Virus record (IMG/VR): IMGVR_UViG_3300008117_000011
Location: 159,672 to 223,671 of that record
DNA length: 64,000 nt
Direction: 5' to 3' (one strand)
Below, piece after piece: positions 9,438-53,554 of the stretch. Position 1 is the first letter of the stretch, and each line of letters begins with the position of its first letter. The translations under genes were made by a program, and so were the position numbers. The notes beneath the pieces were generated by a model. It did not search any database, had not been told where the DNA came from, and saw only the letters and a program-made list of their open reading frames with translations.

Positions 9438-9485
9438 TTATTTCATTTTAATATAAATAGATTGTTGTTACTTTTTATAAAAATA

Positions 9486-11523
9486 TTAATCTTTATTAGT
9501 AAGTCTTGGTCCTGTTAAATTATACCTATTTTCAACATCCATAATTCTTGATCTAATCAAATTAATGTTGTTATTACTTTCAGCACCTGTAAACCACTTT
9601 TCAACACCTTGTGATATTAATGTTGTTAGTGCTTGATTTTGTAAATTAGGGTCCATTGTTACATTTACATCAACTTTTATATTTTCATTAATATCAATTG
9701 GCTTAAATTCAATCGCATTTAAATTTTGTGAGATTGATTGACTTGAAATTTTTTGTTCAACTTGAAATTTTTTGTTCAACTTTGTTTAATGTTGTATTTG
9801 TACCTCCTCCCATTTCTTGAAAATTACTATATGGGTCGGTTGTTGATCCACCGATTCCGAACTCTTTTGCTTTTTCGGCAATATAATCATATGTACCACC
9901 AAAAATATCTTTAATATTTTTACCTAAATTATCTATCATATTTTGTGCTCCAGTAAAATCAAAATTAGTTAAATCAAAACTACTTAAACTTGTCATAACG
10001 TTACTTAAGTCTGTCACAAGAGTTTTTGCCACATTTGCCAAAACTTCAGTACCTTTTTCGCCACCAAATTTCCTCCAGGTTTCAGTTTCGGTGTACATAG
10101 GTGTAACAAAACCTTCAGTACCTAATCTTTTATCACCAAAAAGTTTTTCTCTAGTGGTTGTTGTTGCAAAATCATAACCAGCAAGAACATCTTTTTTTGT
10201 TGCAATTCCCATTCCAATTGCTTCAACTAAAGATTTAAAATTTGCATTTAATTTTGTTTGTTCACTTAATTGGTCAAAGGCAATTTCTTCCATTGATTTG
10301 CCTCGTAGTTCTTGATCTTTTTTGATGTTTTCAAGTTCTTTCACTGTGAGTTGTGAAGCTTCAACTGTTCTATATTCACCAGTTCTATTACCTTCTGCGT
10401 CTAATTTTGCAACTTTGATTTCAGCAACACCTTGTGCGTTTACTTCAGCTAAAGTTGCGATAAGTTCTCTATCTTCTTTTGATGCAATACTTGATGGGAA
10501 TCTAATTTGTTTCATTTTCATATCAAGATTAGCGGCGTTAAGGGCCATTTTTTGAATTGCCCCATCAGCTAGTCCAAGTTCTTTTCCGATTTCATTTAAT
10601 CTTCTTTTTTCACCTGGCATAATTTCAAATTGGCCTAATTCTTTGTTAAAACGAACAAAATCTTTTGACATATTAACAATTTGATTTTGAAGTTCTGTTG
10701 GGTCATTTTGAGATAGATCCATCAATCGTAATGGGTCTAAAAGAGCGTTTGCTGAAACCCCTAGTCTTTGCATTGCTGCAGCAGTTTCTATAGCACCTTT
10801 AGGGTCAAATACTTTATCTACAATTGTAAATATTTGTGACATATCAATTCCCAATTTTGAGGCTTGCGCTGACATTTTTGCGAGGCCTTTAACGCCACCC
10901 TCAAAATTATAGATATTCATTTTATCTAGATTTTTGACGACTTGTTCGGATACTGCCGAAACTGAAACACCTGCCTGTCTTGCGATTTCTGCAACCTGTG
11001 TCATATTTTCACCAACTTCTTGAATACTAATACCAACACCTCTAAATCCACCAGCTAAATCCTTTGCATTAATATTAGTTACTTTTGCTGTCGCACCAAG
11101 TTCAAGTAAATCTTGATCAGATACTGAAATATCAGTTTTAAATGTATCAGCTAGAGCTTGATATGTCTTTCCAACGTCAGCAGTCTCAAGACCTATTGAT
11201 GCAAATTTAGACGCACCATCTGCAATTAATTTTTTAAATTCATCAACTTTTTGTGAACCTAAACCAATAAAACCTCTTAATCTAGCTTGTTCATCATCTA
11301 AAAATCTAGATGTTTTTAGAATACCAGAAGTACTAACAAGGGCATTACCAATATCAGCAAAATATTGTGATGCCTCCTTTAAACCATCTCTACCTTTGGC
11401 AATATTAGCATAGAAACCTTCAGTAAATGATTTTGTTAGTATATCACCTTTTATTCCTGCCGAATCACCGGTACCAGATTTACCTTCAACATCAGAACCT
11501 TCTGTACTTTGGAACATTAACAT
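9486..11523 (-). CDS. Tape measure protein (~672 aa if repaired), split by a 19 bp tandem duplication
   Basis: Ala/Lys/Gln-rich helical protein right after tube and chaperone; ORFs 9757..11523 and 9486..9779 both contain VEQKISS and join in frame when one repeat copy is removed. Confidence 0.75.
9741..9778. repeat. Perfect 19 bp tandem duplication acttgaaattttttgttca x2
   Basis: Read directly at 9741-9759 and 9760-9778. Confidence 0.95.
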
Positions 11524-11548
11524 TTTTTATTTTATAAATACTTTCTTA

Positions 11549-11698
11549 TCATTTTTTATCTTCAAGTAACTTGTCAATGGTATACTTTCTAAAATAGGTG
11601 GGCATTATCAAATAATCACTATATGATAGATGAAGCATTTTTGCTAAAAAAATGTATTCGTCAATAATAATTTTTCTATACTCAGAAGAAAGGCCGAA
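11549..11698 (-). CDS. Unannotated 49-codon ORF, gp51/gpT-like; probable +1 frameshift extension of the tail chaperone
   Basis: Reads FGLSSEYRKIIIDEYIFLAKMLHLSYSDYLIMPTYFRKYTIDKLLEDKK then TGA TAA; fills the gap between chaperone and tape measure; no start codon at its 5' end. Confidence 0.7.
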   Translation of the reverse strand, partial: FGLSSEYRKIIIDEYIFLAKMLHLSYSDYLIMPTYFRKYTIDKLLEDKK

Positions 11699-12446
11699 AA
11701 AATTCAACCCCAAAAGTAATGTTTACCATTACTCTTTCTCCAGACGGGGCTATAACTTCTTTGTTTAAATCTAATCTTGGTTCATTGTTTACCAAAAATG
11801 ATCTTATATATTTAGAATCCATTATAGGCATTGACTCAACAAATTTTCCAATTTCAGATCTGTCTTGTGATCCGTTTATTTCAACAATTTGTTTGGCAAG
11901 TCTTAATGTTATAATTGGTGCTGTTCTTCCTTGAGGGTATGAATCAACAATACTTTCAATTTCAAGCGAATCCCTAAGTGTTAAAAGTTTTAATTTAACA
12001 GTCGCCTTACTTCTTGGTAAAGTTGTTGTAAATGTACCATCAGTATCTGGTTGTGCTTCACATTTTTTGATATCCATCTCATCTAGTAAAATTGATGATT
12101 CAAATTTTTTCTCAGTTTTTGGGTCAATAAGTGTTACTTTATATTCCGGACCAAAAGATGTGTTTCTTAAAAATAAAAGTATTGCTTCAATATCACCATC
12201 AAGCAAATCTTCCGGACGAAGATCTGGTTCGTAAAGTTTATTTCTTAATAGTGGTAATACAATTGTTTCTTTAATTGTTTTATTACCCTCAATATTAAGT
12301 AATATATTCTCATCGCTTGCGGTTAAATAACCCACTTTAACTGATTTCTTTTTTGATGGGTAAAAAATACCACCTGATGGTAATGGTACAACATCGTGTG
12401 GTAAGTTAAAATTCATTTGTCCAGCATCATTTACACTTATATCCAT
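11682..12446 (-). CDS. Tail assembly chaperone / T4 gp26-like hub assembly protein
   Basis: LPSGGIFY, LTASDENIL, GDIEAILLFLR..SFG.EY, C-terminal EFFRP; sits between tube and tape measure. Confidence 0.75.
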   Translation of the reverse strand: MDISVNDAGQMNFNLPHDVVPLPSGGIFYPSKKKSVKVGYLTASDENILLNIEGNKTIKETIVLPLLRNKLYEPDLRPEDLLDGDIEAILLFLRNTSFGPEYKVTLIDPKTEKKFESSILLDEMDIKKCEAQPDTDGTFTTTLPRSKATVKLKLLTLRDSLEIESIVDSYPQGRTAPIITLRLAKQIVEINGSQDRSEIGKFVESMPIMDSKYIRSFLVNNEPRLDLNKEVIAPSGERVMVNITFGVEFFRPFF

Positions 12447-12490
12447 AACTTTTTTATTATAAAAATACTTGACTTATGTTTTTTGTAAAT

Positions 12491-12520
12491 AAAAAATCCC
12501 ATACTTGAAATATGGGATTA
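12491..12520 (-). terminator. Rho-independent terminator after the tail tube gene
   Basis: Stem aatcccata/tatgggatt with a 7 nt loop, followed by a U-run on the minus strand. Confidence 0.7.
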
Positions 12521-12541
12521 GTAAAAATATGTAAAAAATAA

Positions 12542-13030
12542 TTAGTACACGAGTATACAACGATCCATTCGTAAACCACAAGTAATATCAGCAAGTGCAT
12601 CTTGACTATAAGATAATGTACCAAAGTTAGCTGAAGTTAAAAATGTTCCTTCTAGAATCCACTTCTCAACAACAACACCTGTTGGATCTAACATCTCAAG
12701 GTCAACATTTTTCTTATATCCTGCAGCATAACCCATACGACCAGTTACTGATTCAGCACATAAACGAACCCATTCCATAAGTGCTTGTGAGGCTGATGGT
12801 CCAATTGGGTCACGGAATTTAACTGAAATTTCATCCCAAGTAAATCTACCTGCAACATATGTTGAGGTGTTTAGGAACTGAATCTCAGTTGGGTTTATTT
12901 TTATTGAAGGCCGAGACGCACTTTCTACATACCATTCATTTATACCCAAACTTGATGGAAATCTCAAGATAAACCTGTTCTGTCGTTTGGGCTCATACGG
13001 AACCGGCATCTTCATTAATAAATCAGCCAT
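12542..13030 (-). CDS. Tail tube protein (T4 gp19-like)
   Basis: 162 aa; EPKRQNRF, AGRFTW, LMEW, YKKNVDLEMLDPTGVVVEKW; downstream of sheath. Confidence 0.9.
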   Translation of the reverse strand: MADLLMKMPVPYEPKRQNRFILRFPSSLGINEWYVESASRPSIKINPTEIQFLNTSTYVAGRFTWDEISVKFRDPIGPSASQALMEWVRLCAESVTGRMGYAAGYKKNVDLEMLDPTGVVVEKWILEGTFLTSANFGTLSYSQDALADITCGLRMDRCILVY

Positions 13031-13095
13031 AGTTTTTTAATTTTTAATTATGTTTATTTTTTATTATAAATATATCCGTAATAAATTTTTTCTAT

Positions 13096-14049
13096 TTACT
13101 TTGATTTAATTTTGGATACAATTCTATTAATTAAGTTCTCTATTATTATTCCTTCATTTAATTCCTCTTCTTTATTATCAGTTTCTATATGAATTTTTGT
13201 ATATCCTCCTTCTGAAGTATCTTGAATTATAAATTTAACTTCTGGATACATCCTTGATAATTCATTTCTTACAAATTCTATCATAGCTTTAACATTCCTT
13301 GGGTCATCGTCTGAAAACCCTAATGAAGCACTAACATATTTGCCACTTCTAATTAAGTCGTCATATTTTGAAATAAAGTCCGCGAGGGCCACCTTTTTGT
13401 TATGTTCAGGGTTTGCCGCACCACCACTAACTTCTAAACCAAATCTTTCTCCAAACTCCGGAGATGAAACCGGGTAGTAATCCCCTTTTTCGTCAAGATA
13501 TAAATCAAGAATTTGATTTTTATCCAAATACTCTAATTTTTCAATAAAATCATCACTAAATTCATTTTCGTGTTTTAAAGTGTCAATAATATTTTCTAAC
13601 ATTTTTTCTTTTTCTTCTGGTGACAATACTAAATGAATAAACATTTTAACACCCTTTTTAAGTACTTCTGGGTTGTGACCTCTAGCTGTAATAATTGAAA
13701 ATGGATTAGCGTAAATTAAACTTTCTTTAAATTTGTTAAAACTTGGGGATTTTTTATTTTTAAGTATTGCCTCTTTTGAGTCTCTTAAAAAAGTGTCCGG
13801 TAATGTAAAATCAATAAAAGCCTCTTTTGGGTTGTTATTTCTTACTCTATAATCTGGTTCTGTTCTAATCTCCGCAAATTTTTCAGTTGACACCTCAATT
13901 GGTTTCCATCTTTTACCAACTTTTTGATCCATTTTGATTTTGGTCGGCATTTGTAAAATATTATCGTCCCAGTCAAAAGCATAGAGTCTTAACTTTCTAT
14001 TGCTTTTCATCTCTAAAAGAATTTCTCTAACTAATTTTTTGTGATTCAT
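13096..14049 (-). CDS. HAD-superfamily phosphatase-like protein
   Basis: Motif I FDWDDN, motif II ITARG, conserved Lys (HNKK), motif IV GFSDDD. Confidence 0.7.
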   Translation of the reverse strand: MNHKKLVREILLEMKSNRKLRLYAFDWDDNILQMPTKIKMDQKVGKRWKPIEVSTEKFAEIRTEPDYRVRNNNPKEAFIDFTLPDTFLRDSKEAILKNKKSPSFNKFKESLIYANPFSIITARGHNPEVLKKGVKMFIHLVLSPEEKEKMLENIIDTLKHENEFSDDFIEKLEYLDKNQILDLYLDEKGDYYPVSSPEFGERFGLEVSGGAANPEHNKKVALADFISKYDDLIRSGKYVSASLGFSDDDPRNVKAMIEFVRNELSRMYPEVKFIIQDTSEGGYTKIHIETDNKEEELNEGIIIENLINRIVSKIKSK

Positions 14050-14070
14050 AATAATAAATATTATATAAAT

Positions 14071-14100
14071 AAAAAAAGGGAGAACTTGTCCCCCTTTTTC
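14071..14100 (-). terminator. Rho-independent terminator after the tail sheath gene
   Basis: aaaaaaagggaga-acttg-tccccctttttc hairpin flanked by A/T runs. Confidence 0.65.
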
Positions 14101-14115
14101 CTTATTCTATTTTTA

Positions 14116-17100
14116 TCACACATCCTCAAACGAAGCACCTGTTGGTGTGATGTAGAAGGTAATGTCAATAAATTCAAGAGATTTTGTAGGTTTGATATAG
14201 ATTTTACCAACAAGTTGGTTTTTATCTAAATCTTCTGTACTATTAGAAACTGTTACTCTAAAGTCATACAAACCTCTATCTCTTCTAATTGCATCAAGAA
14301 TTGGGTTAACCGCATTCAAGAAGTCCTGTCTTACTTGTTGATCATTTTGATCAAACAATAGCCTTACAGAAACCGCAGAAATCAACTTACGAGCTTGTAG
14401 TAACAATCTTCTTACGTTAATTCTGTCAAGAGCAGATTCTCTTACTTGTAGAGTTTTGTTACCCCAGATTACAGTACCAACATCAGAGAAAGTTGCAATT
14501 GGGTTAATTCTACCAAGGTAAAGAACATCTCTATCTTCTTGTGTCAACTTCTTACGAGCTTTAACCGCATTAACAATACCACGAGTATAACCAGCGGCCG
14601 CAAACCAAGGGAATGCAATGTTATCAGTTAACGCCAAGTTTCTTGTAACTTCAGCTGTTGGTGGTATGTAGATTTGTGTATTATTCACAGTATCTCTTGT
14701 TAATACCCAAGGATAATAAGTTGCTGTGTAGTTAGAATCAATTCCTGTTTCTTCTAACAAGTCAACAGCTTCTTGTGGGTAAATTAAACCATCAGATTCA
14801 GTTGTTGTTGCTTGGAACATATTAAAGTCTGGCATTGTTGTTACATAAAGTGAGTCAGCTCTTTCGTTCTCAATCATATCAATTGTACCCTCAACAAGAC
14901 CGGAGTTATTGTAAAGATCAATACCCGGTGTTGTAAATACATTGATGTTAACAGCTTCAGGATTTGCAAATGTTCTAATACCTAACATATAAGCATAGTA
15001 ATCTGTGTTACCGTATTCCACACTACCATCACCGATAGATATTTGTTTGAATAGTCCGTTTCCAGTACCATTAGGGTATCTTGTTGATGTGCACGCTCCT
15101 TTTAAGAAACCAGATCTACCAAGAGTAAACTTATCTGCGTTTGTTCTATATTCTCTATAGATGTCCCATCCGTCAAATCCACCATAAACAAATACTGTGA
15201 ATTTTCTTGAGTTTAATCTGTAGTAAGGATTCTCAGGGTCAGTTGGTTCAGAAGAGAATGATGTATTACCAACCTCAAACGCTGGAGTTCCAGATGATGC
15301 GTAAACACTTGAAATTGTTACAGCACTAGCGAATTGGTCCATATGGTATCCTTTTGTTTGGAAATCCCATTCAACACCTTCACCAGTACAAAGATTAAGA
15401 GGTCGTCTTTTTCCTTTATATTGGAAGAAATCACTATCGTAACCCCAGAATGATGAAAGTCCAAGATATGTTCTTCTTACGTTATCCCCAGGACTTGTAA
15501 ATACATCGTCAATTCCGTTAGATAATCCAAATGGTGGGTTATAAACAACTTCACCAGGTATATCATATTTAGTTTTGTAAACTGGGAATGGAGATGTTAC
15601 TCCCGGATATTCTCTAAATGTATAACCTCTAAATCCACAAGGAAGAGCGTCAATTGGTGCGTCCTCATTCATCTCTATTAAAATGTATTTAGAATTCAAC
15701 ACGTATTCACCATCAAGAGTTCCTACTTTTTTAGCGATGAAATTATTTTCTTGTGGGTTCATAGAACAATTTGTGAACTTTTCAAGAACTGTTGGGTTAG
15801 CATCACTATCAAAATAATCTCTAATCAATAATGTGAATGTTAAATTATTAAATGAAATATCAGAAATTGACACTTTAATTTCAGTGTTTGCTGAATTACC
15901 ATCAGAAATGCTATAAACTTTAAATAAGTTGAATACTTTATTACCTCTAACTTCAGAAACAACCCAAGGTGTTACAGGGGACTGGAATCTATCTAAATAC
16001 CATCCAATTGTATTAGGGTCATTTGCTTGAGCTTCTTCTGTTGTTACAAGTTCAGAACTTAATCCTCTAATAAATCCTTTATTCCATCCATAACTTAAAA
16101 GAGTTTGGAAATTTTCTTCAACCATAAGTGGTGTTTGTAATCTTGGTTTACCAAAGTTACTTTTCCCAAATACTTTATTGATATTTTTAGAGTCGTTTGA
16201 AGACAATGAAACCTCAAAGTCAAAATCAGTACCAACTTTATTTGTCGCATTGATTGCAAATTTAGCGAAAGGATTTTTCTTAACTGAAGAATAAACACCT
16301 GTCATATCTAAAGTAACATCAGTAACACCAGTGATTTCGTAAACTGGGTTAACATCAGTACTATAAGTTGAGATACCTCTTGATCTTAAAGTTACAACAA
16401 CTAAGTCATCATATTCAGTGTATGATGTTCCAGTGTAATAATAGATAACACCAGTAACATTACCAGAATAGCACTCATTTACAATTGGGGCTGTTGGTGT
16501 TGGCGTTGGTGGAACTGGAGTTAAAGTAACACAAGGATCTGGTGTTGGTGTTGGCGTTGGTGCCGCACTTGTTGTTGTGGTTGTAACCGGTGTTATATTT
16601 GTTAAATCCGTTACTGTTGTAAAGAATGAATAACCAGTATAAAGACCTGAACCAACATTGTCCATAAGGGCATAATACCAAGCATCGTTAAGTGGTGATG
16701 AAGTGTCTAAAGATTCAAAAGGAATTGACTCAACACCAAAAACATTTGTTTCTTGTGTATATCCTGTTGTACTTAAATATGTGTAATCACTTTCTGGTAT
16801 AGCACCAAAATAGTAAACAACCTCATCTTCCGCAGTTGATGGGTTACTACTTGTTATCACATCTGAGACCATTAAACTAATTTGGTCATCAAGAGTTGTG
16901 ATGTCACCATCTAACTCTTCATATTCCTCAGTCAACATACTTTCAATGTCAGACGGAAAAGCACCTAAGAATAATACGTTAGTTGGATTGAGTGTACAAG
17001 CACTAAAAGGAATTGAGAATGACAATTCTTTTTTAACAACACATACTGGTTCACAATCAACTGTTACACCACTTAAACAAAAATAATCCAATGTTTTAGG

Positions 17101-17451: not shown

Positions 17452-17571
17452 AGTTTTAAAAATGTTTTATTAATTTATTTTAATAATAAATATTAGTAAT
17501 TTTCGTAAAAACTTTACTTCTTATAAACTATTTATATTTTGGTAAGAATTTTTTCTACCTTTTTTCTACCT

Positions 17572-17736
17572 ATGGAAAATAAGCCAAAAAAGATAAAAAA
17601 TTTAAAGATTTCTGTTGAAGCTCATAACACTCTAAAGAGTTATTGTGATAAACGTGGTATCAAAATGTATAAGTTTTTAGAGAACTTAATCTTTGAGAAA
17701 TGTAAAGAAAAAAGAGATATCTACGGAGAGAATTAA
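17572..17736 (+). CDS. Small ribbon-helix-helix-like DNA-binding protein
   Basis: IKNLKIS..AHNTLKSYC...GIKMYKFLENLI strand-helix-helix pattern; ATG at 17572 preferred over the upstream TTG. Confidence 0.6.
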   Translation: MENKPKKIKNLKISVEAHNTLKSYCDKRGIKMYKFLENLIFEKCKEKRDIYGEN

Positions 17737-19286: not shown

Positions 19287-19345
19287 ATTGATTATTTATT
19301 GATAAATATTCTTTTTTTGTTTATTTTTATATATATTATTTAGTT

Positions 19346-21106: not shown

Positions 21107-21137
21107 AAATAACCTAATTTGTATATTTATTATATAA

Positions 21138-23229: not shown

Positions 23230-23237
23230 TATTTATA
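23230..23237 (+). promoter_or_regulatory. TATTTATA putative late promoter; one of about 16 copies listed in the findings
   Basis: Same sense-strand motif lies shortly upstream of most virion gene starts. Confidence 0.6.
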
Positions 23238-27739: not shown

Positions 27740-27768
27740 AGTATATTAGTAAATTTGTTTTTTGTCAA
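27740..27768 (-). promoter_or_regulatory. Sigma70-type promoter of the DNA polymerase gene
   Basis: TTGACA (27768-27763), 17 nt spacer, TATACT (27745-27740). Confidence 0.75.
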
Positions 27769-31276: not shown

Positions 31277-31303
31277 CTATAGTTTTTACTATAAATATAT
31301 GAA

Positions 31304-34182: not shown

Positions 34183-34281
34183 ATAGAAAAATTAACGATT
34201 TTTTATTTTAAATAAATAATATTCAAAACCTAATTCTATATATTTCTACTAATGTTTTACTATTTTTTTCATAACAATTAA

Positions 34282-41869: not shown

Positions 41870-41884
41870 ATCACATATAAATAT

Positions 41885-45201: not shown

Positions 45202-48153
45202 TTACATTTGTAACCAAGTTCCTGTTCCTGTATTAAATAATATAATTGCACCTCCATCGGCATCTAATATTAGTGTTTGTGTGTTTTCAACTCCAATAAT
45301 TGTGTCTGTACCATTTGCAATAAATGTTATATTATTAATATATGAGTTTAACCCAATGTCTTTAACATCATACCTTAATCTACCAGATGTAACAGAATTA
45401 GGTAAATAAATTGTAGTTGCTGATATTGAAGAGTCAACACCAATAACATTGTCGGTTGTAAGGGCTGAATATGTGGCGCCGCTAACATAGGTGTAGTTAT
45501 TTCCAATAGTATTAACATTTCTATACTCAACCACACCAGTTGTTTCATTTCTCCCTAAAATTTGTGTTAAATTGTTATTAAGGTTTGGTATATCTGATAT
45601 TGTAATGGTGTTAGCGGTAAACCCATTTTGTACAACTGTTCCACCAGTAACAATTAAATCACCATCATATACTAAATCACCAACAACAACGACATCCCCC
45701 ACAACATCTAAATTACCATTAATACAAGTATTTCCTGTTACAGATAAAGTACACCCTGTTGTGTGTCCAGAAATATTGAATGACCCAATTTGGTTTGTGT
45801 TTCCTGTTACATTATAGTTACCAATCTGTGTTGTATTACCAGAAATTGTATAATTACCATTTAATGTTTTTGTATATTCCCAATATCCTTGTGATGAATT
45901 ATATGATATTAAATCACCATTTGTTTGACCACTAGTTTGAACATTGTGTAAATCACCTAAGTTATATCCTAATGATGGTCTGACAAATAGTGAACCATTA
46001 ACAGCAGCATCAATAACAATAGCCATTTGGATTTTAAGGTTTGGTTCAGTAGGTTCAAAACTAGTTAACCCACCAGGTATTGTTGGACTTACATAAAGTA
46101 TCGTACCATCAACCCAGGTTTCACCATATAGTGAACCTGTAGTGTTTACCCCCCTAATTAAGCCAAATTCATAAACATAACCATCTTCACCATTTAATAT
46201 GTTTTCCCCAGCAATACCTAATGTAAAATAGTATGGAATAGTACCATCTGCAATCATATACTCACCAAGTATTCTACCACTAGTACCAAGAGTACCAGAC
46301 GCTCTGACAACCCTACCTTTATTTATTGTCGCACCACTTTGGTTTTTAATATAATATAGATTGTCTAAACCAACTTTAAGGCTTACGTTATTTCCTTCTA
46401 AATCAACATCAAGTGTTCCATAATCAACATCCCAATGAAGCCTACCTTCTTGTACTGTTGGTACGTATGCGGTATTAAAATCAATGTAATTTGTATATAC
46501 TGATGTTGCGGATAATGAATTAAATTTTGAATCCCCCGATGCGGTAATCCAAGCAGTTTCAACACCCGCATTGTTCTCAACGATAATATTTTTATCATTA
46601 TCATTTCCAGTACCACCTTTAAATTGAACCCCCCCTAATATTGAATTTGTTGTAATTTCAGGTGATGTTGAATTATTATATGCTTGTTGTAAATTTGTTG
46701 TGGATGTTCCACCAAACTTAGACGCAAAAAAGAATTTAGCCTTAGTTTCGTCAGTTAAATCAGTTGCCGTACTTAATACAGATAAAACACCTATAAGAAC
46801 AGCATCGGTACTTAAATTAGGGAATGATATAAATGATTCATTTTGTAATGCTGAAATTGCTAATGCTAGTGTATTGTAATTTTGTTGACCATACATTACC
46901 ACAACTGAACCATCTTGTTGTAAGTAAATTCTTTGATTTGTTGCCTTTGTTCCTGTTATTGGTGTAATAACACCACCAAGGTCATAATTTAAAGGGTCAA
47001 TATCTGTTACATCTGTCAATGTCGCCCCTGTTTGTGTTCTATATTGAAATGTTCTAGGGTTTTCTCCTGTAACGTAAATAGTGTTTGGACTTAAAGTATT
47101 ATTTGCAAAATTAATACCTAACCCATATAGATAGCCAGCACTTGTATTAAACTTTAAATTAGCCCCATTTGTTGATGGTAGTATACCTCCATTAATTAAA
47201 TTAATAGGTGTGAACATATCTCGTAATTGACCCAATGGGGATAAAACAAAATCAGGTTGACTAAATACTGAATAAATTGATGTTTTATCTGGGTGGCTTA
47301 ATTTACCTAAAAATATATTTTGTCTTCTTTGTTGTTCCGATAAAGGTGTTGATTGTTGTGATATTGTACCACCACTATTTAAAAAAACAAATGTTTCAGT
47401 GGAAGTGTTAACAAAATTATCTGTGTTTACCCCACCACTATAAGATAAATAATATATTTGTGGACTTAAAGGGTTTGATGTGTCATCAACAATCCACCCT
47501 TTAACTGGTGATACATAAAATGTTGTTGTTGATGCTGTTGTAATACCTGTAAATTCAAACACACCTGTTGATGAGTTTACCGTAGATATATTATATCCTA
47601 AAGCTACCCAATCAGAACCATTACTAACCAATTGTAACGCATTTGTTTCACCAAGTATCACAAATGGTTTATCATCTATTGTTTCTGAACCAAAAGGTTG
47701 TACTGTTACAGCGCCTCCTCCATTATTTTTAATATTATATAATTTACCTTGTACACCTACCGCAGTTGGTAAATATATTGTAAAAGTTCCACCAGAAGCA
47801 TCTATCATAAAATCTTCTGTTTGTGCTGTATACGTTGAATTAATTGTCTTCTGTGGAAATATAATACCACCAGTTGATGTAATACCACTAGTTTGTGTTA
47901 AACCACTAACAAATAATGTATCGGCTGATAGACCATTTGTAAAAATTGTAGGACCGTAAACAGTTCCTCCGGATAATGTTGATAATCTATCCCACCCTAT
48001 TGGGAGTATTTGATTTGCTGTTGATCCTGATGTATATAAAATTGCATCAGCTGTATTAAGTGCTAATTCACCAGATGTTAGTCCACTTGCGGGTGGAACT
48101 TTTCCTGGGACATTAGACCTTTTAATAAGGAATGTCGTTTGTCTATTTGCCAT
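45202..48153 (-). CDS. Tail fibre-like protein, 983 aa
   Basis: N-terminal IKRSNVPGKVP..LTSGELALNTAD fibre motif; TNLQQAY; GNLDVVGD-type repeats; two IYLP..IK..TI..W modules. Confidence 0.65.
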   Translation of the reverse strand: MANRQTTFLIKRSNVPGKVPPASGLTSGELALNTADAILYTSGSTANQILPIGWDRLSTLSGGTVYGPTIFTNGLSADTLFVSGLTQTSGITSTGGIIFPQKTINSTYTAQTEDFMIDASGGTFTIYLPTAVGVQGKLYNIKNNGGGAVTVQPFGSETIDDKPFVILGETNALQLVSNGSDWVALGYNISTVNSSTGVFEFTGITTASTTTFYVSPVKGWIVDDTSNPLSPQIYYLSYSGGVNTDNFVNTSTETFVFLNSGGTISQQSTPLSEQQRRQNIFLGKLSHPDKTSIYSVFSQPDFVLSPLGQLRDMFTPINLINGGILPSTNGANLKFNTSAGYLYGLGINFANNTLSPNTIYVTGENPRTFQYRTQTGATLTDVTDIDPLNYDLGGVITPITGTKATNQRIYLQQDGSVVVMYGQQNYNTLALAISALQNESFISFPNLSTDAVLIGVLSVLSTATDLTDETKAKFFFASKFGGTSTTNLQQAYNNSTSPEITTNSILGGVQFKGGTGNDNDKNIIVENNAGVETAWITASGDSKFNSLSATSVYTNYIDFNTAYVPTVQEGRLHWDVDYGTLDVDLEGNNVSLKVGLDNLYYIKNQSGATINKGRVVRASGTLGTSGRILGEYMIADGTIPYYFTLGIAGENILNGEDGYVYEFGLIRGVNTTGSLYGETWVDGTILYVSPTIPGGLTSFEPTEPNLKIQMAIVIDAAVNGSLFVRPSLGYNLGDLHNVQTSGQTNGDLISYNSSQGYWEYTKTLNGNYTISGNTTQIGNYNVTGNTNQIGSFNISGHTTGCTLSVTGNTCINGNLDVVGDVVVVGDLVYDGDLIVTGGTVVQNGFTANTITISDIPNLNNNLTQILGRNETTGVVEYRNVNTIGNNYTYVSGATYSALTTDNVIGVDSSISATTIYLPNSVTSGRLRYDVKDIGLNSYINNITFIANGTDTIIGVENTQTLILDADGGAIILFNTGTGTWLQM

Positions 48154-48239
48154 ATATATGACTTAAATTATATGTAATGGTTATATAACCTTTTTTATAA
48201 ATACTAATGGTTGATAAAAAAAATTAAATTATTTGAAAT

Positions 48240-48304: not shown

Positions 48305-49987
48305 TTAGTAGCTGCCCCCATCTAAAACATCAAATTCGGCCAAGACTCTAACCCCATTAAATGAACCATCATCAGTAGGGTCTGTACTTCTAATTACAAT
48401 GTCATTTAATTGTGTAACCCAACCTCTATTTGGATATCCAGTAAGAGCAGTATATTCTGTAACACTTGGTACCTCTGTTCCGGTAAGACCTGTAAGGTTT
48501 TGCATTCTTACAATATCAAAATTAACATCACCAGCCGCAATACCATTACCGTCTTGGATTGTAAATCCGGCGTTAACAGATGTTGCAATTGTTGATCCAG
48601 TTGGGTTATAGTTTAATGTAATGTTTGGGTCTTCTACGTAAAGGTTGCTTGTAAATGCTGATATTGCAGCTCCAAGTACCGTTAAGTCACCTTGGATTAC
48701 AACATTACCTGCGGCATCAATGTTATCAACACTTAAAGTATTTGTTCCGTCATTGTATGTGAATGTTGATTCATCTGTTAGTAATCCTCCAGGTCCAACA
48801 TAAACAACTCTTCCCTGTGTAAGGTTTGAGAAACTTAAACCAGAAACTGTGTTGATTGACGCAACCAAATCTGGTTGTCCTTCATTTTGAGAAATTGTGA
48901 AAGTATTTGTTGTTGGACTATATGTAAAACCTGTAACATATGTATCGTTAATATCAATACCAGATAAACTAACGCTATACACAACACCATCATTTCTTGT
49001 AAAGTCTAAAGCTTCAGTTCCAGAGTTGTATGTTCCACCAGTTGTATAAACGTTTGTATATGGTAATGTGTATGTACCAGGAGCAACGTCTTGATTATAT
49101 AACAATCCAATTGACGCTGTACTAGTATTATCGGTAGCAGCCGTATTTGTACCACCGGTAACATAAGTGTCGTTTGTGTCAATAGTGCTTAAATCAACAG
49201 TATATGATGTACTATCATTTTTAACAAAAGTAATTAATTTATTACCATTGTTGTATGTACCACCAGTTGTAAATGTATCTTGTGTTGTGATAAAATAAGG
49301 GCCACCTATAGGTGTGCCGTGATAATCTAACTGAGCTGATTGTGTCGGTGTATCGTTAGTTGACGGAGTTAAAGTATTTCCAGTAACATAAACATCATTT
49401 GTTTGACTAAAAGCTGTAAGCGATCCATAATTTACAATCTCTAATGAGCTTGATCCAGTTGCGGTTGTGTTATAAAGTCCAGTACCAGTAATTGTTAAAT
49501 TATTAACAACTTCAGTTCCGGTTACATTTAAATTACCATTAATTGTAAGAGCTGTAAAAGAATCAATTGTTACTGGAACAGCTGGCTTACCATTATTTAG
49601 TTCAATTGTTAGTACATTTGGTGACCAAGTAGCTCCAGTTGTATATGAGTCAACAGATGCCGCAATGTCCGTTATATCTGCCAACACAAAACCAGATGTT
49701 GTACCAGAAAGGAATTTACCAACAAGCCCAGAACCAGTTTGGTCTTGATATTTTGTGATTTGATTTCTTAATCTTAAATCATAGAGATTAGAACCAACCT
49801 CAAAAAAGTTTGCTGTAGTACCTGTTCCTGCCGGAGTCCATTCTGCTGTTGATGTTGTAAATCCTGAGAAAAATACAATACCATCTGCGGTATTAACAAT
49901 TGGTTCACCTTTTAATAGACTACTAGGTAATGGTCTATTAACTATATCTGAATTTTTTAAAACGTGTGTTGTGTTTCTTATTGCCAT
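48305..49987 (-). CDS. Tail fibre-like protein, 560 aa
   Basis: LLKGEPIVNTADG N-terminus; repeated DTYVTGGT / TTGGTY units; GDLTVLG..VEDPNITLN; ends LDGGSY. Confidence 0.65.
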   Translation of the reverse strand: MAIRNTTHVLKNSDIVNRPLPSSLLKGEPIVNTADGIVFFSGFTTSTAEWTPAGTGTTANFFEVGSNLYDLRLRNQITKYQDQTGSGLVGKFLSGTTSGFVLADITDIAASVDSYTTGATWSPNVLTIELNNGKPAVPVTIDSFTALTINGNLNVTGTEVVNNLTITGTGLYNTTATGSSSLEIVNYGSLTAFSQTNDVYVTGNTLTPSTNDTPTQSAQLDYHGTPIGGPYFITTQDTFTTGGTYNNGNKLITFVKNDSTSYTVDLSTIDTNDTYVTGGTNTAATDNTSTASIGLLYNQDVAPGTYTLPYTNVYTTGGTYNSGTEALDFTRNDGVVYSVSLSGIDINDTYVTGFTYSPTTNTFTISQNEGQPDLVASINTVSGLSFSNLTQGRVVYVGPGGLLTDESTFTYNDGTNTLSVDNIDAAGNVVIQGDLTVLGAAISAFTSNLYVEDPNITLNYNPTGSTIATSVNAGFTIQDGNGIAAGDVNFDIVRMQNLTGLTGTEVPSVTEYTALTGYPNRGWVTQLNDIVIRSTDPTDDGSFNGVRVLAEFDVLDGGSY

Positions 49988-50018
49988 AACTTATTTTATT
50001 TAATAAATATTTACTTTT

Positions 50019-50618: not shown

Positions 50619-51470
50619 TTAACTACACATCCAACTATAAATATTTCCGTTAAAGTTGAAGTATGTTCTGTATATGTTATATGTTACTGGGAATCCACCT
50701 CCATCAACAATTGTAATTTGTCCATTGAGTATTGTTGGAATCACAAATCCATTACATCCTGACAAACTATCTCTAAATTTAGAAGGTTGTGCAAGACTTG
50801 TAGGTATTAAAATATATCCATAACCAAGACCGACATTAAATTCAACATAGGTCTCCACGACAGGATTTCTAGCATCAAATGTAAGTGATGGTACATCTAC
50901 TAGTGTAATATTTGTTTTATTAACCTTACCATAATAAATACCGAGCTCAGCTGGTGTTGGGCTCTTTGTAGGTGTTGGTGTTGGTGTATTTGTAGGTGTA
51001 ACCGTTGGTGTAACACTTATTGTAGGTGTTGGTGTTGGTGTAAACGCAGATGGTAATGGCGTAATACAAATATCCCAAGTCGCCGTAGGAGTTGGTGTTG
51101 GTGTCGCAGTCGGTGTTGACGTAGGTGTTTTTGTAGGTGTCGGTGTAACACTTGACGTAGGTGTAGGTGTCGGTGTAACACTTGACGTAGGTGTAGGTGT
51201 CGGTGTAGGTGTTCTTGTTGGTGTTGGTGTAGGTGTAGGAGTTGGTGTAGGCCTAGGTACATTTAAAATATACGGACAATCATCATCTAATACCAATATT
51301 GTATACGTCCCATAAATTTCTTGAGGTGGAATTAAAAGTCCCGGTTCAAATGTTAATGGTAATACGACAATACCCAGATTTATAACATCAAGTGAGTTAT
51401 CTGGTTTAAAAAGAACTTGAGCTTCTTCCCCATCATTATAAACGCTATTTATTGTAATTGTTTGACTCAT
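50619..51470 (-). CDS. Virion protein with a long mucin-like (Pro-Thr)n linker
   Basis: About 100 residues of PT/TS repeat between two small globular domains. Confidence 0.6.
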
Positions 51471-51472
51471 CC

Positions 51473-53502
51473 TTATGGATTTGTTGTTGTAGTTGTTGTT
51501 ATATTATGTGTTGTTGTAGTTGTTGTATTATCATTTATTGTGTAAGTAAAATCATTTGGCTCACAGAAAGTTGTTGAGCAATCTGGACAGAATGGGTTAA
51601 ACATTTTAAATTTATCTTTAAGAACTTCAAAGTTGTGTCTAATCTCACTTGAATCAAGTGGTTCAACGTACATTCTAAATTGTGATATACCACCCTCAAA
51701 TGTTCCAGCAAATTCCTGTTCAAGAAGGATATCTGTTTTAAGACCAGAAAGTGATGACATATCAAGAACTGACGTTGGGAAAAGTTCAGGATCTTGGATA
51801 TAAGGGCCCGTAAGACCACTACAAGATTGTGGGATAAGATTTTCGTGAAGTCCTTGAGTTCCACCACCCCAAGAAACATTAAAAGGAACCCCAACTTGTT
51901 TTTCCTTATCAGTACTTAAAGCTCTTGGTATTATCTCTTCAAAATCTTTTATTGTGTAAATTAACTTACCATTAACATAAATGAGTAAAGTCCCATTTCT
52001 AAATTTCTTATCATCAAGCCATTTATCATTTAACTGAACAATATCAATTTTTTCTGGTTGTTTTTTATTTGTGTATGGTGGCTTAATAAGGGCTATTGTG
52101 TTATTTGCAAGTGACTCAAGATATACACTTTCTGTTATATCACCAAGTCCACCATCATACCACAAATGACAGTTATTAAGATTTGTATCTCTTTTCCACA
52201 CAACATCAAGTAAGAACCAATGTTCAAAATCTAGATAAGCCGGATTTTCTTTTTCACAGGTTGGGTAAATTGGAGGTGTACACCATTCTTGTATTGTATA
52301 CCCAGTCATATATGTATTTCCAGTAACACAAGTTCCAGTTGTCTCACAACCACCAGTGAATTTCAATACTTTTATTCCGATTCCCGGATTTTTTGGGTCA
52401 CCACATAATTTAAATGAGATGTTATTTGACATTACATCAAATAATGGATCTGACTCACAAGTATTTTCAATTGAGGTGAATCCAGTTGATGGGCAATCAA
52501 CACAATCAAGACAACCCTCACAAGTTGTACAAGTTGGTGTACAAGTTGTGGTTGGGGTATTACAAGTATCTACTGGAGTTGGTTCTGGTGTTGGTGTCGG
52601 TGTTGGTGTTATAATAGTCTCACAATTATGTGTTCTACACTCCCACCCACAAGTCTGACATCCATAATCGTTACACCCACAACCACAACTTATTGATTTT
52701 GTAAGATCTCCTTGACATGCATTGCACCCATAATTTAAATGTGGGTCGTGAATTCCATCAGCAGATCTTGGTGGATAAAGATATATACATCTACTATTTG
52801 TAATAGTTTGGTTACAGCAAGCACAAGTTTGTAAACAATTCGCAAGTGGTGTTGTAACTCTTGTGTATCCACTAAAACAATTTGGTGTACCATCTGCGTA
52901 GTGGTAAAATTTATTTTCAGCTCTAGCGCCTAAATAAAAAAATGTATTTTTGTTTTTTGGGTATAACTGATTTAATGTCGTTTCATTTGGTAATGGATTG
53001 TATTCATTTGTCAATCTTGGTTTCAAGACCATTTCAACAGCCCATCCTTTATTTACCCTTTCTGGAAAAATATCATAGTCGTACCCAAACTATCAAATTT
53101 TACAGAGTCGTTGAAAATTCCTTGGGTAAAATTAATTGTTTGATTGTCCATATTATCAACAAGCCCATTATCAATACCGGTAAATCCAATATCACAACTG
53201 CTTGATTCTGAAAAACAAGAAAGGTCTTTATCATCTGGGTTATAGTAATTTTGAGATACTATAACATTATTTGGATTAAATTGTTTGTAATTTAAATTTA
53301 TTTGTTGGCTTGTCTCCGAGTCATCTAAATCAAAATAAAACGGGACTTTATTTCCATATGTTTGTGCAATTATATATGGTGAAAACACAACCTCCTCATT
53401 ATAATCCCTCTCATCTGATGCCAATGACATATCCATACCGTCATAAATTAGGTTCAGATTAAATTTTTTATAACTATACTGGTTAATATTTTGGTATGCC
53501 AT
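51473..53502 (-). CDS. Cys-rich virion protein with a LamG/ConA-like C-terminus; reading frame broken near 53090
   Basis: The frame of 51473..53032 extends upstream as FGYDYDIFPERVNKGWAVEMVLKPR and overlaps the end of 53053..53502; LLIYVNG..FEGGISQFRMY..LDSSEIRHNF is LamG-like. Confidence 0.6.
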
Positions 53503-53554
53503 ACTTATTTCTTAATAAATACAACTAATCAAAGTATTTATAATAAAATTAAAT

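What the first reader, a model, noticed from the sequence alone, without database searches (positions are those of the whole stretch)
9452..53542. Sense-strand TATTTAT(A/T) upstream of most virion genes: a putative late promoter that is the reverse complement of T4's TATAAATA
Seen about 6-45 nt upstream of start codons at 9452, 11533, 13065, 14053/14064, 17485, 19302, 31290, 34212, 41876, 48196, 50002 and 53514 (minus-strand genes) and at 17529, 21124, 23230 and 53535 (plus-strand genes). Orientation follows the gene. The polB gene and the 56 kb cluster instead have -35/-10 promoters. Inference: a phage late sigma factor recognises this single element. The copy at 34212 would place the GT60/HtrL operon in the late programme. 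AT-richness makes single hits weak; the positional consistency is the evidence.
Basis: partly seen in the sequence, partly recalled or inferred. Interest (0 to 1): 0.62.

Follow-up and report, generated by a model that had tools for sequence, protein, structure and literature searches.

The report
Conserved TATTTAT promoter of jumbo phages
A short DNA word, (A)TATTTAT(A/T), sits just upstream of about 65 genes of this uncultured freshwater giant phage and of its distant relatives; it is almost certainly a phage-specific promoter, probably read by a phage-encoded sigma factor, and often sits so close to the start codon that the mRNA can have almost no leader.

Summary
All 17 listed sites exist. 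Whole-window counts are at chance (33 vs 33). But in co-directional intergenic DNA of the 223.7-kb contig, TATTTAT is the commonest and most strand-biased 7-mer (41 sense, 8 antisense; about 8-11 expected). It is retained upstream of eight orthologous genes in relatives of 69-79% DNA identity while its flanks drift. It often follows intrinsic terminators. It shows the same bias in a 99%-complete relative, where it precedes the Gp23 capsid gene, and in 76 distant phage loci (227:58). No -35 element accompanies it. Spacing to ATG is bimodal (3-5 and 13-14 nt), which implies leaderless or near-leaderless mRNAs if the box sits like the Bacteroidota -7 box. It is not restricted to virion genes, so "late" is unproven. 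T4 gp55, Gp23, portal, terminase and gp45 clamp families gave no match in this 76%-complete contig. The clade encodes three sigma-like proteins: a sigA-like paralogue, an ECF type, and an unannotated 250-aa sigma ("sigma-X") with a gp55-like domain, lying 7.9 kb beyond the contig end in a co-linear contig that shares at least one identical protein. Which one reads the motif is inferred. "Reverse complement of T4" is incidental: same-strand identity to TATAAATA is 6/8.

The parts
9452..9459 (-). TATTTATA box, 14 nt before the ATG of the 1703-aa gene 4326-9437
   Evidence: Retained in 23/23 distinct orthologous upstream regions.
11533..11540 (-). TATTTATA box, 9 nt before the 588-aa gene 9757-11523
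13065..13072 (-). TATTTATA box, 34 nt before the tail tube gene 12542-13030
   Evidence: Tube assignment from phrog_4542, E 9e-25. Retained in 37/37 relatives.
14053..14071 (-). Two boxes (TATTTATT 3 nt and TATTTATA 14 nt before the ATG of the 317-aa gene 13096-14049), directly after the sheath gene's terminator hairpin
   Evidence: The proximal copy is retained in 28/29 relatives, 24 of them at 3 nt.
17485..17492 (-). TATTTATT box, 33 nt before the tail sheath gene 14116-17451
   Evidence: TATTTAT is present in 26 of the 27 distinct upstream regions from relatives with 59-83% sheath identity; L030, the 27th, starts too close to its contig end to reach the site.
17529..17536 (+). TATTTATA box, 2 nt before the TTG of the divergent 65-aa ORF 17539-17736
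   Evidence: Retained in 21/21 relatives at the same spacing.
19301..19308 (-). TATTTATC box, 14 nt before the 170-aa gene 18774-19286
   Evidence: Retained in 23/24 relatives.
19293..19300 (+). TATTTATT facing the SNF2-type helicase gene (start uncertain, 19346 or later); weak case
   Evidence: Only partly conserved.
21124..21131 (+). TATTTATT box, 6 nt before the 693-aa gene with SOD domains, 21138-23219
   Evidence: Retained in 18/18 relatives, 16 of them 4 nt from the ATG. In 13 of the 14 upstream regions printed it follows a terminator hairpin; the window's own region has none.
23230..23237 (+). TATTTATA box, 13 nt before the gp13-like neck gene 23251-24378
   Evidence: Retained in 16/16 relatives.
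31290..31297 (-). TATTTATA box, 13 nt before the 325-aa gene 30299-31276
   Evidence: conserved in G001
34211..34218 (-). TATTTATT box, 28 nt before the GT60 (PF11397) and HtrL_YibB gene pair 31304-34182
   Evidence: a copy is also upstream in G001
41876..41883 (-). TATTTATA box, 6 nt before the collagen-like tail-fibre ORF 41360-41869
48196..48203 (-). TATTTATA box, 42 nt before the tail-fibre gene 45202-48153
50002..50009 (-). TATTTATT box, 14 nt before the 560-aa gene 48305-49987
50636..50643 (-).
53514..53542 (.). Back-to-back pair in a 52-nt divergent spacer: TATTTATT(-) 11 nt before gene 53053-53502 and TATTTATA(+) 12 nt before gene 53555-54421
27740..27768 (-). Two-element promoter TTGACA-N17-TATACT, 30 nt before polB (24749-27709). 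Contrast class.
56231..56259 (+). Two-element promoter TTGACT-N17-TATAAT after a terminator. It heads the long + strand operon. In a co-linear contig that shares at least one identical protein this operon runs on to the sigma-X gene.
12456..12467 (-). TATTTTTATAAT, a conserved non-canonical element before the baseplate gene 11682-12446, which lacks the 7-mer

Best explanation
(A)TATTTAT(A/T) is the core, and probably the only, element of a phage-specific promoter class. This class is used about 65 times in this 224-kb contig and throughout a broad clade of AT-rich jumbo myoviruses whose host is probably a member of the Bacteroidota.

It acts as a -10-like box without a -35 partner. I infer that a phage-encoded sigma factor on host RNA polymerase core reads it. 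My preferred reader is "sigma-X", a previously unannotated 250-aa sigma. Its N-terminal domain is structurally closest to the sigma-region-2 domain of T4 gp55. Its gene lies at the end of the operon that starts at window 56231.

My working model is a cascade:
1. Host-type two-element promoters (TTG-N20-TAnnTT) express early genes. These include the sigA-like operon, polB and the operon carrying sigma-X.
2. The TATTTAT regulon then comes on. It holds the tail, neck, fibre and head genes, plus DnaB, an ECF sigma and many small ORFs.

About a third of the boxes end 3-5 nt before the ATG. The host -7 box occupies -12 to -5. If this box sits the same way, those transcripts start at or next to the A of the start codon, that is, they are leaderless. 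A second group, with 13-14 nt spacing, would have leaders of about 9-10 nt.

Status of each step:
- Shown: enrichment, strand bias, conservation and association with gene starts.
- Inferred: promoter function, the identity of the sigma, the timing and the transcription start sites.

Rough odds: it is a promoter, about 0.85; it is read by a phage sigma, about 0.75; that sigma is sigma-X, about 0.5.
For: Enrichment and strand bias:
- 41 sense against 8 antisense, with 8-11 expected.
- 59 of 137 genes with an upstream spacer of 25 nt or more carry it.

Phylogenetic footprints:
- Retained in 23/23, 37/37, 28/29, 23/24, 18/18, 16/16 and 21/21 distinct orthologous upstream regions, while the 5' flanks are only 62-84% conserved.
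- Spacing to the ATG is gene-specific and conserved.
- Genes inside operons serve as controls: 1/25, 1/25 and 3/29.

Promoter-like context:
- It often lies between an intrinsic terminator and an ATG with no room for another signal. Examples are the g317 and sod693 orthologues and genome positions 23650 and 147476.
- Divergent spacers carry back-to-back copies. One spacer, at genome 5328-5362, is only 33 nt long.
- There is no -35 signal in a 65-site profile.

Replication elsewhere:
- In the 99%-complete relative G001 the count is 66 to 10. The spacing peaks are the same (3-5 and 12-14 nt). Copies precede the Gp23 capsid gene and five neighbouring genes in its region.
- In 76 distant loci chosen only for carrying a sigma-X homologue (30-42% identity), TATTTAT is again the top 7-mer: 227 to 58, p 9e-25, with the same spacing.

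Host-type geometry:
- Four of the 20 TAnnTTTG boxes found within 60 nt of a start in this genome (about ten of them with an upstream TTTG) also end exactly 4 nt before an ATG.
- In Flavobacterium psychrophilum that box spans -12 to -5, and 5.5% of mRNAs are leaderless (PMC9723704).

Sigma-X is a sigma factor:
- AF2 model with pLDDT 90.8.
- Foldseek's top 50 hits are nearly all sigma factors.
- VIA-align gives T4 gp55 (7d7c_F) Z 10.9, rmsd 4.0, 117 of 137 residues aligned, at rank 2. Full-length sigmas align out to residue 249.
- The family profile hits SigA region 2 at E 0.003 and gp55 at E 0.09.
- 18 of 85 members hit phrog_234.
- Weak Sigma70_r2 hits fall in frames of sigma-X size in all 16 records; for G014 the hit (26 bits, over Pfam's cut-off) lies inside the sigma-X locus.
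- The family's most conserved block, KAYSYxGT, aligns with the gp55 segment holding pocket residues H95, Y97 and T99.

Place in the cascade:
- Sigma-X is never preceded by TATTTAT (0 of 76 loci).
- The ECF sigma gene is preceded by it, and this is conserved.
- A metatranscriptome holds contigs identical to parts of the sheath and tube genes.
Against: - There is no transcription-start, timing or binding data. The one RNA run is held only as contigs.
- The sigma-X gene is not in this contig. It was found in L290, a co-linear contig that shares at least one identical protein, and in relatives.
- Sigma-X has an extra sigma-4-like domain, yet the promoters show no -35 box.
- Sequence similarity to gp55 is weak (BLASTP E 0.001 over 65 residues). 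Helical folds give middling Z scores easily.
- A sigA-like paralogue co-occurs with sigma-X in most of the large genomes checked. In the most complete ones (75-100%) a second Sigma70_r2 gene is always present. Co-occurrence therefore cannot separate the two.
- The motif also precedes replication-type genes (DnaB), so "late" may be wrong.
- With T4 geometry (box at -13 to -6), sites spaced 3-4 nt from the ATG would put +1 inside the start codon.
Confidence: 0.7

Rival explanations
1. The motif is a promoter, but its reader is the phage's sigA-like paralogue. This is a 266-274-aa protein at genome 108762-109586, outside the window. It would be a host-type primary sigma whose -10 specificity has shifted from TAnnTTTG to TATTTATW.
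For: - It has regions 1.2, 2 and 4.
- Its closest cellular homologues (41-44% identity) are mostly primary sigmas of Bacteroidota and their FCB-group neighbours such as Ignavibacteria.
- It is 80-89% conserved across more than 80 relatives, more than the sheath or the ECF sigma.
- Differences from cellular sigA that are fixed in the phage clade cluster in regions 1.2, 2.3, 2.4 and 3.0. These regions read the -10 element and the discriminator. Region 4.2 is nearly unchanged.
- TATTTATW and TAnnTTTG share TAnnT and the same 4-nt spacing to ATG.
- Its operon has a conserved two-element, early-type promoter.
Against: - A nearly host-identical region 4.2 predicts dependence on a -33 TTG, which TATTTAT sites lack.
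- The two-element class (polB, the 56-kb operon, its own operon) fits it, or host sigA, better.
- Nothing ties it to the motif beyond co-occurrence.
Confidence: 0.22
2. The reader is the 192-aa ECF-type sigma (genome 17573-18151), which activates its own gene and the rest of the regulon.
For: - It is a bona fide ECF-type sigma (Sigma70_r2 and r4_2).
- Its own gene has TATTTATA 4 nt before the ATG. A copy (TATTTATT, 3 nt before the ATG) is also present in relatives with only 60% protein identity and otherwise unrelated upstream sequence. ECF sigmas are typically autoregulated.
Against: - ECF sigmas normally need a -35 element (AAC type) and a CGT-type -10. Neither is present.
- An ECF-sized sigma was seen in only 1 of 16 wider-clade records, although those loci still show the motif bias.
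Confidence: 0.04
3. The word is not a promoter but an mRNA-level signal. It could be a translation-initiation enhancer for a host that lacks Shine-Dalgarno sequences, or a processing site that cuts polycistronic RNA before each gene.
For: - Only 15 of 294 genes have an SD-like 4-mer.
- The motif lies very close to start codons, with a preferred spacing of 13-14 nt.
- Many copies lie inside long co-directional gene runs.
Against: - Spacing ranges from 2 to 58 nt, and 3-5 nt is too close for a ribosome-binding element.
- Copies sit directly after terminators and in short divergent spacers where no upstream transcript can supply the RNA.
- The exact 7-mer is invariant, as expected for protein-DNA recognition. 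Known Bacteroidota enhancers are A-rich, not TATTTAT (abstract of PMC6847099, listed).
Confidence: 0.06
4. The boxes are ordinary host sigA promoters, degenerate -7 boxes, or a by-product of AT-rich intergenic composition.
For: - The genome is 31% GC and the whole-window count equals chance.
- The word shares TAnnT with the host box.
Against: - It is enriched 4-5-fold over composition-matched models. It ranks first among 21 T5A2 7-mers and shows a strong strand bias.
- It lacks both the -33 TTTG and the terminal TTG.
- True host-type promoters exist separately in the same genome and are confined to other genes.
Confidence: 0.04

Closest known systems
Phage T4 late promoters (TATAAATA) read by gp55 with gp33 and the gp45 clamp
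   Same: - A single 8-bp -10-like box without a -35 element, used tens of times per genome upstream of virion genes in a myovirus with T4-type sheath, tube, gp13, gp25 and Gp23 proteins.
- 6 of 8 bases are identical on the same strand. This includes the adenines at -12 and -8 that gp55 buries (PMC7892883).
- The candidate reader has a gp55-like sigma-2 domain (Z 10.9).
   Different: - The central AA is replaced by TT.
- The gp45-type clamp family gave no match, even in two complete relatives. gp33 was not searched for.
- The candidate sigma is 250 aa and has an extra sigma-4-like domain.
- Many boxes abut the ATG, which implies leaderless mRNAs. From memory and unchecked here, T4 late mRNAs have leaders with SD sites.
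- The regulon includes DnaB and a further sigma gene.
Bacteroidota primary-sigma promoters (-33 TTTG, -7 TAnnTTTG)
   Same: - An 8-mer beginning TAnnT.
- Identical preferred spacing (4 nt) to start codons in this genome.
- The host box spans -12 to -5 (PMC9723704).
- The phage encodes a paralogue of this sigma.
   Different: - The last three positions are ATW, not TTG.
- There is no -33 element.
- It is a separate gene set from the TTTG/TAnnTTTG and TTGAnA-N17-TATAnT promoters found in the same genome.
Sigma cascades of large phages (Bacillus phage SPO1 gp28 then gp33/34; phiEco32 gp36)
   Same: - Host sigma for early genes, then phage-encoded sigma-70-family factors retarget host core polymerase to phage-specific motifs.
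- One sigma gene (the ECF type) lies within another's regulon.
   Different: - Those promoters are two-element (-35 and -10).
- The sigmas are unrelated in sequence.
- The Bacteroidota context without SD sequences and the leaderless geometry are not known there.
- This comparison rests on general knowledge and the abstracts listed.

Membership tests
T4-type late promoter system | Single -10-like octamer with no -35 element | tested here: met
   A 65-site profile shows no conserved upstream box. There is only a weak A/T patch 14-16 nt upstream.
T4-type late promoter system | Consensus TATAAATA on the non-template strand | tested here: not met
   The consensus is (A)TATTTAT(A/T), 6 of 8 identical. 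TATAAATA itself is depleted on the sense strand, 5 against 25.
T4-type late promoter system | Precedes late (virion) genes | tested here: inconclusive
   It precedes the sheath, tube, neck, gp25-like and fibre genes, and in G001 the Gp23 capsid gene and its neighbours. It also precedes DnaB, an ECF sigma, GT60/HtrL and many small ORFs. There is no timing data.
T4-type late promoter system | gp55 orthologue | tested here: inconclusive
   In the own contig phrog_234 hits only the ECF sigma, weakly. Sigma-X, in relatives and in a co-linear contig that shares at least one identical protein, has a gp55-like sigma-2 fold (Z 10.9). Its sequence signal is weak and it has an extra C-terminal domain.
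T4-type late promoter system | gp45 sliding clamp (with gp33 co-activator) | tested here: not met
   phrog_223 finds nothing in the own contig or in two 99-100%-complete relatives. gp33 was not searched for.
Bacteroidota sigA promoter | -7 box TAnnTTTG | tested here: not met
   Positions 6-8 are A, T, W. The terminal G is absent in all 65 sites.
Bacteroidota sigA promoter | -33 TTTG about 19-21 nt upstream | tested here: not met
   TTTG-N10-22-TATTTAT occurs once on each strand. There is no signal in the profile.
Sigma-70 family (for sigma-X) | Sigma region 2 domain | tested here: met
   - The family profile hits SigA region 2 (E 0.003).
- Sigma-2 structures align at rmsd 2.5-3.0 over about 95 residues.
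- Weak Sigma70_r2 hits fall in frames of sigma-X size in all 16 wider-clade records; the G014 hit, inside the sigma-X locus, passes Pfam's cut-off.
Sigma-70 family (for sigma-X) | Sigma region 4 helix-turn-helix | tested here: inconclusive
   Full-length sigmas align out to residue 249, but with high global rmsd. The C-terminal domain was not folded or searched on its own.
Leaderless mRNA | Primary 5' end at the start codon | not testable with these tools
   Only contigs of one metatranscriptome were available. The geometry argument rests and on PMC9723704.

The most novel reading that the evidence does not exclude
Sigma-X founds a large, so far unannotated family of phage sigma factors: more than 1,100 clusters at 50% identity and no Pfam model. 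It combines a gp55-like sigma-2 domain with a sigma-4-like domain. It directs host RNA polymerase to a single-element TATTTATW promoter across a wide clade of aquatic jumbo phages of Bacteroidota. At about a third of its promoters transcription would start at the start codon. That would make leaderless translation a routine part of the late programme in a phylum that does not use Shine-Dalgarno pairing.
Probability: 0.4. Interest if true: 0.72.

Novelty: new variant of a known kind. Interest (0 to 1): 0.6.

Why it matters
This motif gives a simple, testable regulatory code for a very abundant but uncultured group of freshwater giant phages. The stretch searched was found in runs from 16 sequencing studies. 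Homologues of the candidate sigma number in the thousands.

- It would let gene-expression units be annotated from sequence alone.
- It points to a new branch of the gp55/sigma family whose promoter specificity can be compared with T4's solved complex.
- It raises the possibility that phages of Bacteroidota, a phylum without Shine-Dalgarno pairing, rely heavily on leaderless mRNAs. That would bear on how translation starts in this phylum.
- It could supply compact orthogonal promoter and sigma parts for Bacteroidota genetics.

Tried and rejected
- Near-identity DNA search of the phage collection found nothing.
- phmmer with T4 gp55, gp45, gp44, gp62, gp46, gp47, regA and rpbA against all ORFs found no match; T4 gp43, queried alongside, gave one weak hit to polB.
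- Searches of the own contig with Pfam Gp23, Terminase_6N and Portal_T4 found nothing. The head module lies in the missing part of the genome, which CheckV rates 76% complete.
- phrog_12791 found nothing.
- Literature searches for TATTTATA or TATTTAT with "late promoter", and for gp55 with Bacteroidetes or flavobacterial phages, found no prior description.
- The RNA run gave only contigs, so starts, strand and level of transcripts could not be read.
- The idea that the box is part of an inverted repeat or operator was rejected. TATTTAT followed within 12 nt by ATAAAT occurs once on each strand in co-directional spacers. The palindrome TATTTATAAATA occurs at only about 5 of 65 sites.
- A separate "classical sigma-70" promoter class was considered. 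It was folded into the host-type two-element class, because TTG-N20-TAnnTT fits the Bacteroidota spacing. This remains an interpretation.
- Co-occurrence could not separate sigma-X from the sigA-like gene.
- The first sequencing-run run was one base over the length limit and was resent.
The step was repeated by reference.
- The host was not identified below phylum level.
- gp33 was not searched for.

Full report
**What the window is**

The window is the last 64 kb of a single 223,671-bp viral contig with 31% GC. The contig is JGI metagenome record 3300008117 Ga0114351_1000034, which CheckV estimates to be 76% complete.

It belongs to an uncultured myovirus. The stretch searched was found in freshwater and lake metagenomes, and in runs labelled fungus metagenome, from 16 studies.

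Gene content is distantly T4-like:
- tail sheath (14116-17451)
- tail tube (12542-13030)
- baseplate protein (11682-12446)
- gp13-like neck protein (23251-24378)
- tail fibres (45202-48153; collagen-like 41360-41869)
- family-B DNA polymerase (24749-27709)
- SNF2-type helicase
- large sets of glycosyl- and methyltransferases

**Host**

The host is probably a member of the Bacteroidota.
- Only 15 of 294 genes have a Shine-Dalgarno-like 4-mer.
- Twenty TAnnTTTG boxes lie within 60 nt of a start, about ten of them with a TTTG 19-21 nt upstream.
- The nearest cellular homologues of a phage sigma gene are mostly primary sigmas of Flavobacteriales, Crocinitomicaceae, Chitinophagaceae, Hymenobacter and neighbouring FCB lineages such as Ignavibacteria.

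**Checking the observation**

One of them (19301-19308) is TATTTATC, so it matches only as a 7-mer.

The total count of TATTTATW in the window is exactly what shuffling gives (33 against 33.1). Position and strand are another matter.
- Genome-wide, 81 of 212 TATTTAT copies lie in the 5.8% of the DNA that is non-coding.
- In spacers between co-directional genes TATTTAT is the most frequent and most strand-asymmetric 7-mer: 41 sense against 8 antisense. ATATTTAT is 27 to 0.
- Markov models trained on the same spacers expect 8-18 copies, and none of 500 simulations reaches 41. The word ranks first among all 21 7-mers of the same composition.
- Of 137 genes with an upstream spacer of at least 25 nt, 59 carry it in sense orientation.

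**Anatomy of the motif**

A profile of 65 non-coding sense copies gives (A)TATTTAT(A/T)(A/T), followed by an A-rich stretch. There is no -35-like element. The only upstream feature is a weak A/T-only patch 14-16 nt upstream of the box.

The distance from the 8-mer to the start codon is bimodal. Twenty copies lie at 2-5 nt and 21 at 11-14 nt. The rest are scattered up to 57 nt. The sheath, tube and capsid genes have the longer leaders, 33-42 nt.

**Conservation**

IMG/VR holds many relatives. The loci used share 69-79% DNA identity with this genome.

Upstream of eight orthologous genes the 7-mer is kept while its flanks drift:
- It is present in 26 of the 27 distinct sheath upstream regions. 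The 27th, L030, starts too close to its contig end to reach the site.
- It is kept in 23/23, 37/37, 28/29, 23/24, 18/18, 16/16 and 21/21 distinct upstream sequences of the other seven genes.
- The 12 nt on its 5' side show a majority base in only 62-84% of sequences.
- Each gene keeps its own spacing.
- Genes inside operons, used as controls, show it in 1/25, 1/25 and 3/29.

In the relatives of the gene with SOD domains, and in the gene after the sheath, the box lies between a terminator hairpin and an ATG only 3-5 nt further on. No room is left for any other start signal.

The signal replicates elsewhere.
- The 99%-complete relative G001 (290,887 bp, about 72% identical) shows 66 sense against 10 antisense. 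It has the same two spacing peaks. Copies lie before its Gp23 capsid gene and five neighbouring genes in that region.
- In 76 loci from much more distant phages, TATTTAT is again the top intergenic 7-mer (227 to 58, p 9e-25) with the same spacing. These loci were picked only because they encode a homologue of the candidate sigma described below.

The element is thus a conserved feature of a wide phage clade, not of this genome alone.

**Why a promoter**

Several features fit a -10-like promoter element and fit mRNA-level signals poorly:
- orientation follows the gene
- the box lies directly after terminators
- back-to-back copies occupy divergent spacers as short as 33 nt (genome 5328-5362; in the window 53514/53535 and 17485/17529)
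- the exact word is invariant
- the distance to the ATG is variable

A second class of signal exists in the same genome and marks other genes. These are two-element promoters of the form TTG-N20-TAnnTT, with or without the terminal TG.
- polB has TTGACA-N17-TATACT at 27740-27768.
- The long + strand operon from 56231 has TTGACT-N17-TATAAT. Its counterpart in G001 has TTGATA-N17-TATATT.
- Most relatives printed have a TTGAT(A/G)-N17-TATATT-like element in front of the sigA-like/replication operon; the own copy reads TTGGAA-N17-TATATT.

I read these as host-sigma early promoters. That reading is an inference.

**Leaderless geometry**

In Flavobacterium psychrophilum the sigA box TAnnTTTG spans -12 to -5, and 5.5% of mRNAs are leaderless (PMC9723704). 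In this phage, four of the 20 TAnnTTTG boxes end exactly 4 nt before an ATG. The modal spacing of TATTTATW is also 4 nt.

If the new box occupies the same place, transcription starts on the A of the ATG for about a third of its genes. For the 13-14-nt group the leader would be 9-10 nt. Whatever the exact register, a promoter whose box ends 3-5 nt before the ATG cannot give a leader of more than a few bases. No start-site data could be obtained. The single RNA run is stored as contigs. It shows only that pieces identical to the sheath and tube genes are present in an RNA library.

**Who reads it**

T4 gp55, gp45 and other T4 proteins are not detectable in the contig. No T4-type clamp is found in two complete relatives either. 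Three sigma-like proteins exist in the clade.

1. A sigA-like protein (genome 108762-109586).
   - It has regions 1.2, 2 and 4.
   - It is 80-89% conserved in more than 80 relatives.
   - Compared with Bacteroidota sigA, its region 4.2 is almost unchanged. Fixed substitutions cluster in regions 1.2, 2.3, 2.4 and 3.0, and about 21 residues of region 3 are missing.
2. An ECF-type sigma of 192 aa (genome 17573-18151).
   - Its own gene carries the box 4 nt before the ATG. A copy 3 nt before the ATG is also present in relatives with 60% protein identity and otherwise unrelated upstream sequence.
   - An ECF-sized sigma was seen in only 1 of 16 records of the wider clade.
3. "Sigma-X", 249-250 aa.
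   - It was found through weak phrog_234 (gp55 family) hits in complete relatives.
   - It is present in L290, a contig co-linear with the window that shares at least one identical protein. There it lies 7.9 kb beyond the end of this contig, near the distal end of the co-directional gene run that starts at window 56231. The L290 copy is 71% identical to the G001 protein.
   - It has no Pfam domain and is usually named "hypothetical".
   - Its family is large: 1,162 clusters at 50% identity.

The evidence that sigma-X is a sigma factor is as follows.
- Its AlphaFold model is confident (pLDDT 90.8).
- Foldseek's first 50 PDB hits are almost all sigma factors.
- A second alignment puts T4 gp55 (7d7c_F) at rank 2, with Z 10.9 and 117 of 137 residues aligned at 4.0 A. 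Full-length sigmas align through to the C-terminus.
- The family profile finds SigA region 2 (E 0.003) and gp55 (E 0.09) among PDB sequences.
- 18 of 85 members hit phrog_234.
- Weak Sigma70_r2 hits fall in frames of sigma-X size in all 16 wider-clade records. For G014 the hit lies inside the sigma-X locus and passes Pfam's cut-off.
- The most conserved block of the family aligns with the gp55 segment that carries the residues forming the pockets for the flipped bases. In T4 these bases are A-12, A-9 and A-8 (PMC7892883).
- Placed in the same register, TATTTATA keeps A-12 and A-8 and changes -10 and -9. The residue aligned with gp55 H95, which forms the shallow -9 pocket, is Tyr in sigma-X.
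- Sigma-X is never preceded by the box in 76 loci. It is usually coupled to a conserved upstream GT2-like gene.

The ECF sigma more likely belongs to the regulon than controls it. None of this has been tested.

**On "late" and on T4**

In the window the box precedes nearly all recognisable virion genes. The baseplate gene 11682-12446 is an exception and has a conserved TATTTTTATAAT instead.

Elsewhere the box precedes a DnaB-type helicase, a gp25-like protein, fibre genes, the ECF sigma and dozens of small ORFs in the left arm.

It does not precede polB, the dUTPase/exonuclease/glycosyltransferase operon, the primase/nuclease/sigA-like/methylase operon or the ribonucleotide reductase gene.

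This pattern suits a "post-early" class. Whether that class is middle, late or both is open.

The informative comparison is on the same strand, where 6 of 8 bases match.

**Verdict**

The finding is a real, conserved, phage-specific promoter-like element. It is a new variant of the single-element late-promoter theme. It comes with a plausible new sigma family and an unusual leaderless geometry. Function, reader and timing remain to be shown by experiment.

Noticed in passing
window 39600-41900: A GC-rich island (37-45% GC) made of 9/18/27-nt repeats. The one minus-strand ORF scanned (41360-41869) matches collagen-like tail-fibre families. I read the 606-aa + strand ORF (39625-41445) as probably spurious. 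The minus-strand reading is split into several ORFs (41360-41869, 40694-41161, 40190-40468). This could mean frameshifts, a repeat-collapsed assembly or separate small genes.
   Followed up: partly
window 21138-23219: A 693-aa protein with Fe/Mn superoxide dismutase N- and C-terminal domains. It sits between the helicase and neck genes and is preceded by the box.
   Followed up: no
window 31304-38233 and 58759-63957; continues in L290:10632-14279: Unusually rich sugar-modification gene sets: GT60, HtrL, GT1, GT9, GT2, GT7C, GT10, GT11 and several methyltransferases. Beyond the contig end come epimerases, a DegT aminotransferase and PhoH.
   Followed up: no
L290:17016-18574; G001 270535-272090; 58 of 76 distant loci: The sigma-X gene is almost always translationally coupled to a conserved upstream gene of about 268 aa with a weak GT2 domain. 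This gene pair is conserved across the clade and its meaning is unknown.
   Followed up: partly
genome (G000) 73634, 83933, 84876, 53883: outside the window: Host-type TAnnTTTG boxes that end exactly 4 nt before an ATG. The presumed early genes may therefore be leaderless as well.
   Followed up: partly
window 17493-17528 and 17452-17484, with orthologous regions in L007-L070: Beside the sheath promoter two further blocks are conserved: GTAAAGTTTTTG 13-15 nt upstream of the box and AAATAAAT 5-7 nt downstream. The tube promoter has a similar AGTAAATAGAAAAA block upstream. Their role is unknown. It could be an activator site, an UP-like element or a leader element.
   Followed up: no
window 12456-12500: The baseplate gene 11682-12446 lacks the 7-mer. 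It has a different conserved upstream block, TTTACAAAAAACATAAGT...TATTTTTATAAT, placed after a terminator.
   Followed up: no
genome 106210-108793: outside the window: Three consecutive cytosine-5 DNA methyltransferase genes lie directly downstream of the sigA-like gene in the same operon.
   Followed up: no
genome 45045-50031: outside the window: A tandem array of six or seven paralogous genes of about 231 aa each, with faint DUF6878 hits in two of them. Only the first is preceded by the box.
   Followed up: no
genome about 16830, 19690, 21310 and 25560: outside the window: Nearly the same terminator hairpin (CCCCTCTAACCGGAGGGG followed by a T run) recurs between small genes of the left arm.
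   Followed up: no
window 11600-17599 in runs X1, X7 and X16: Many metagenome contigs of 90-95% identity lie alongside the identical ones. Several co-existing strains or species of this phage are therefore present in the same lakes.
   Followed up: no
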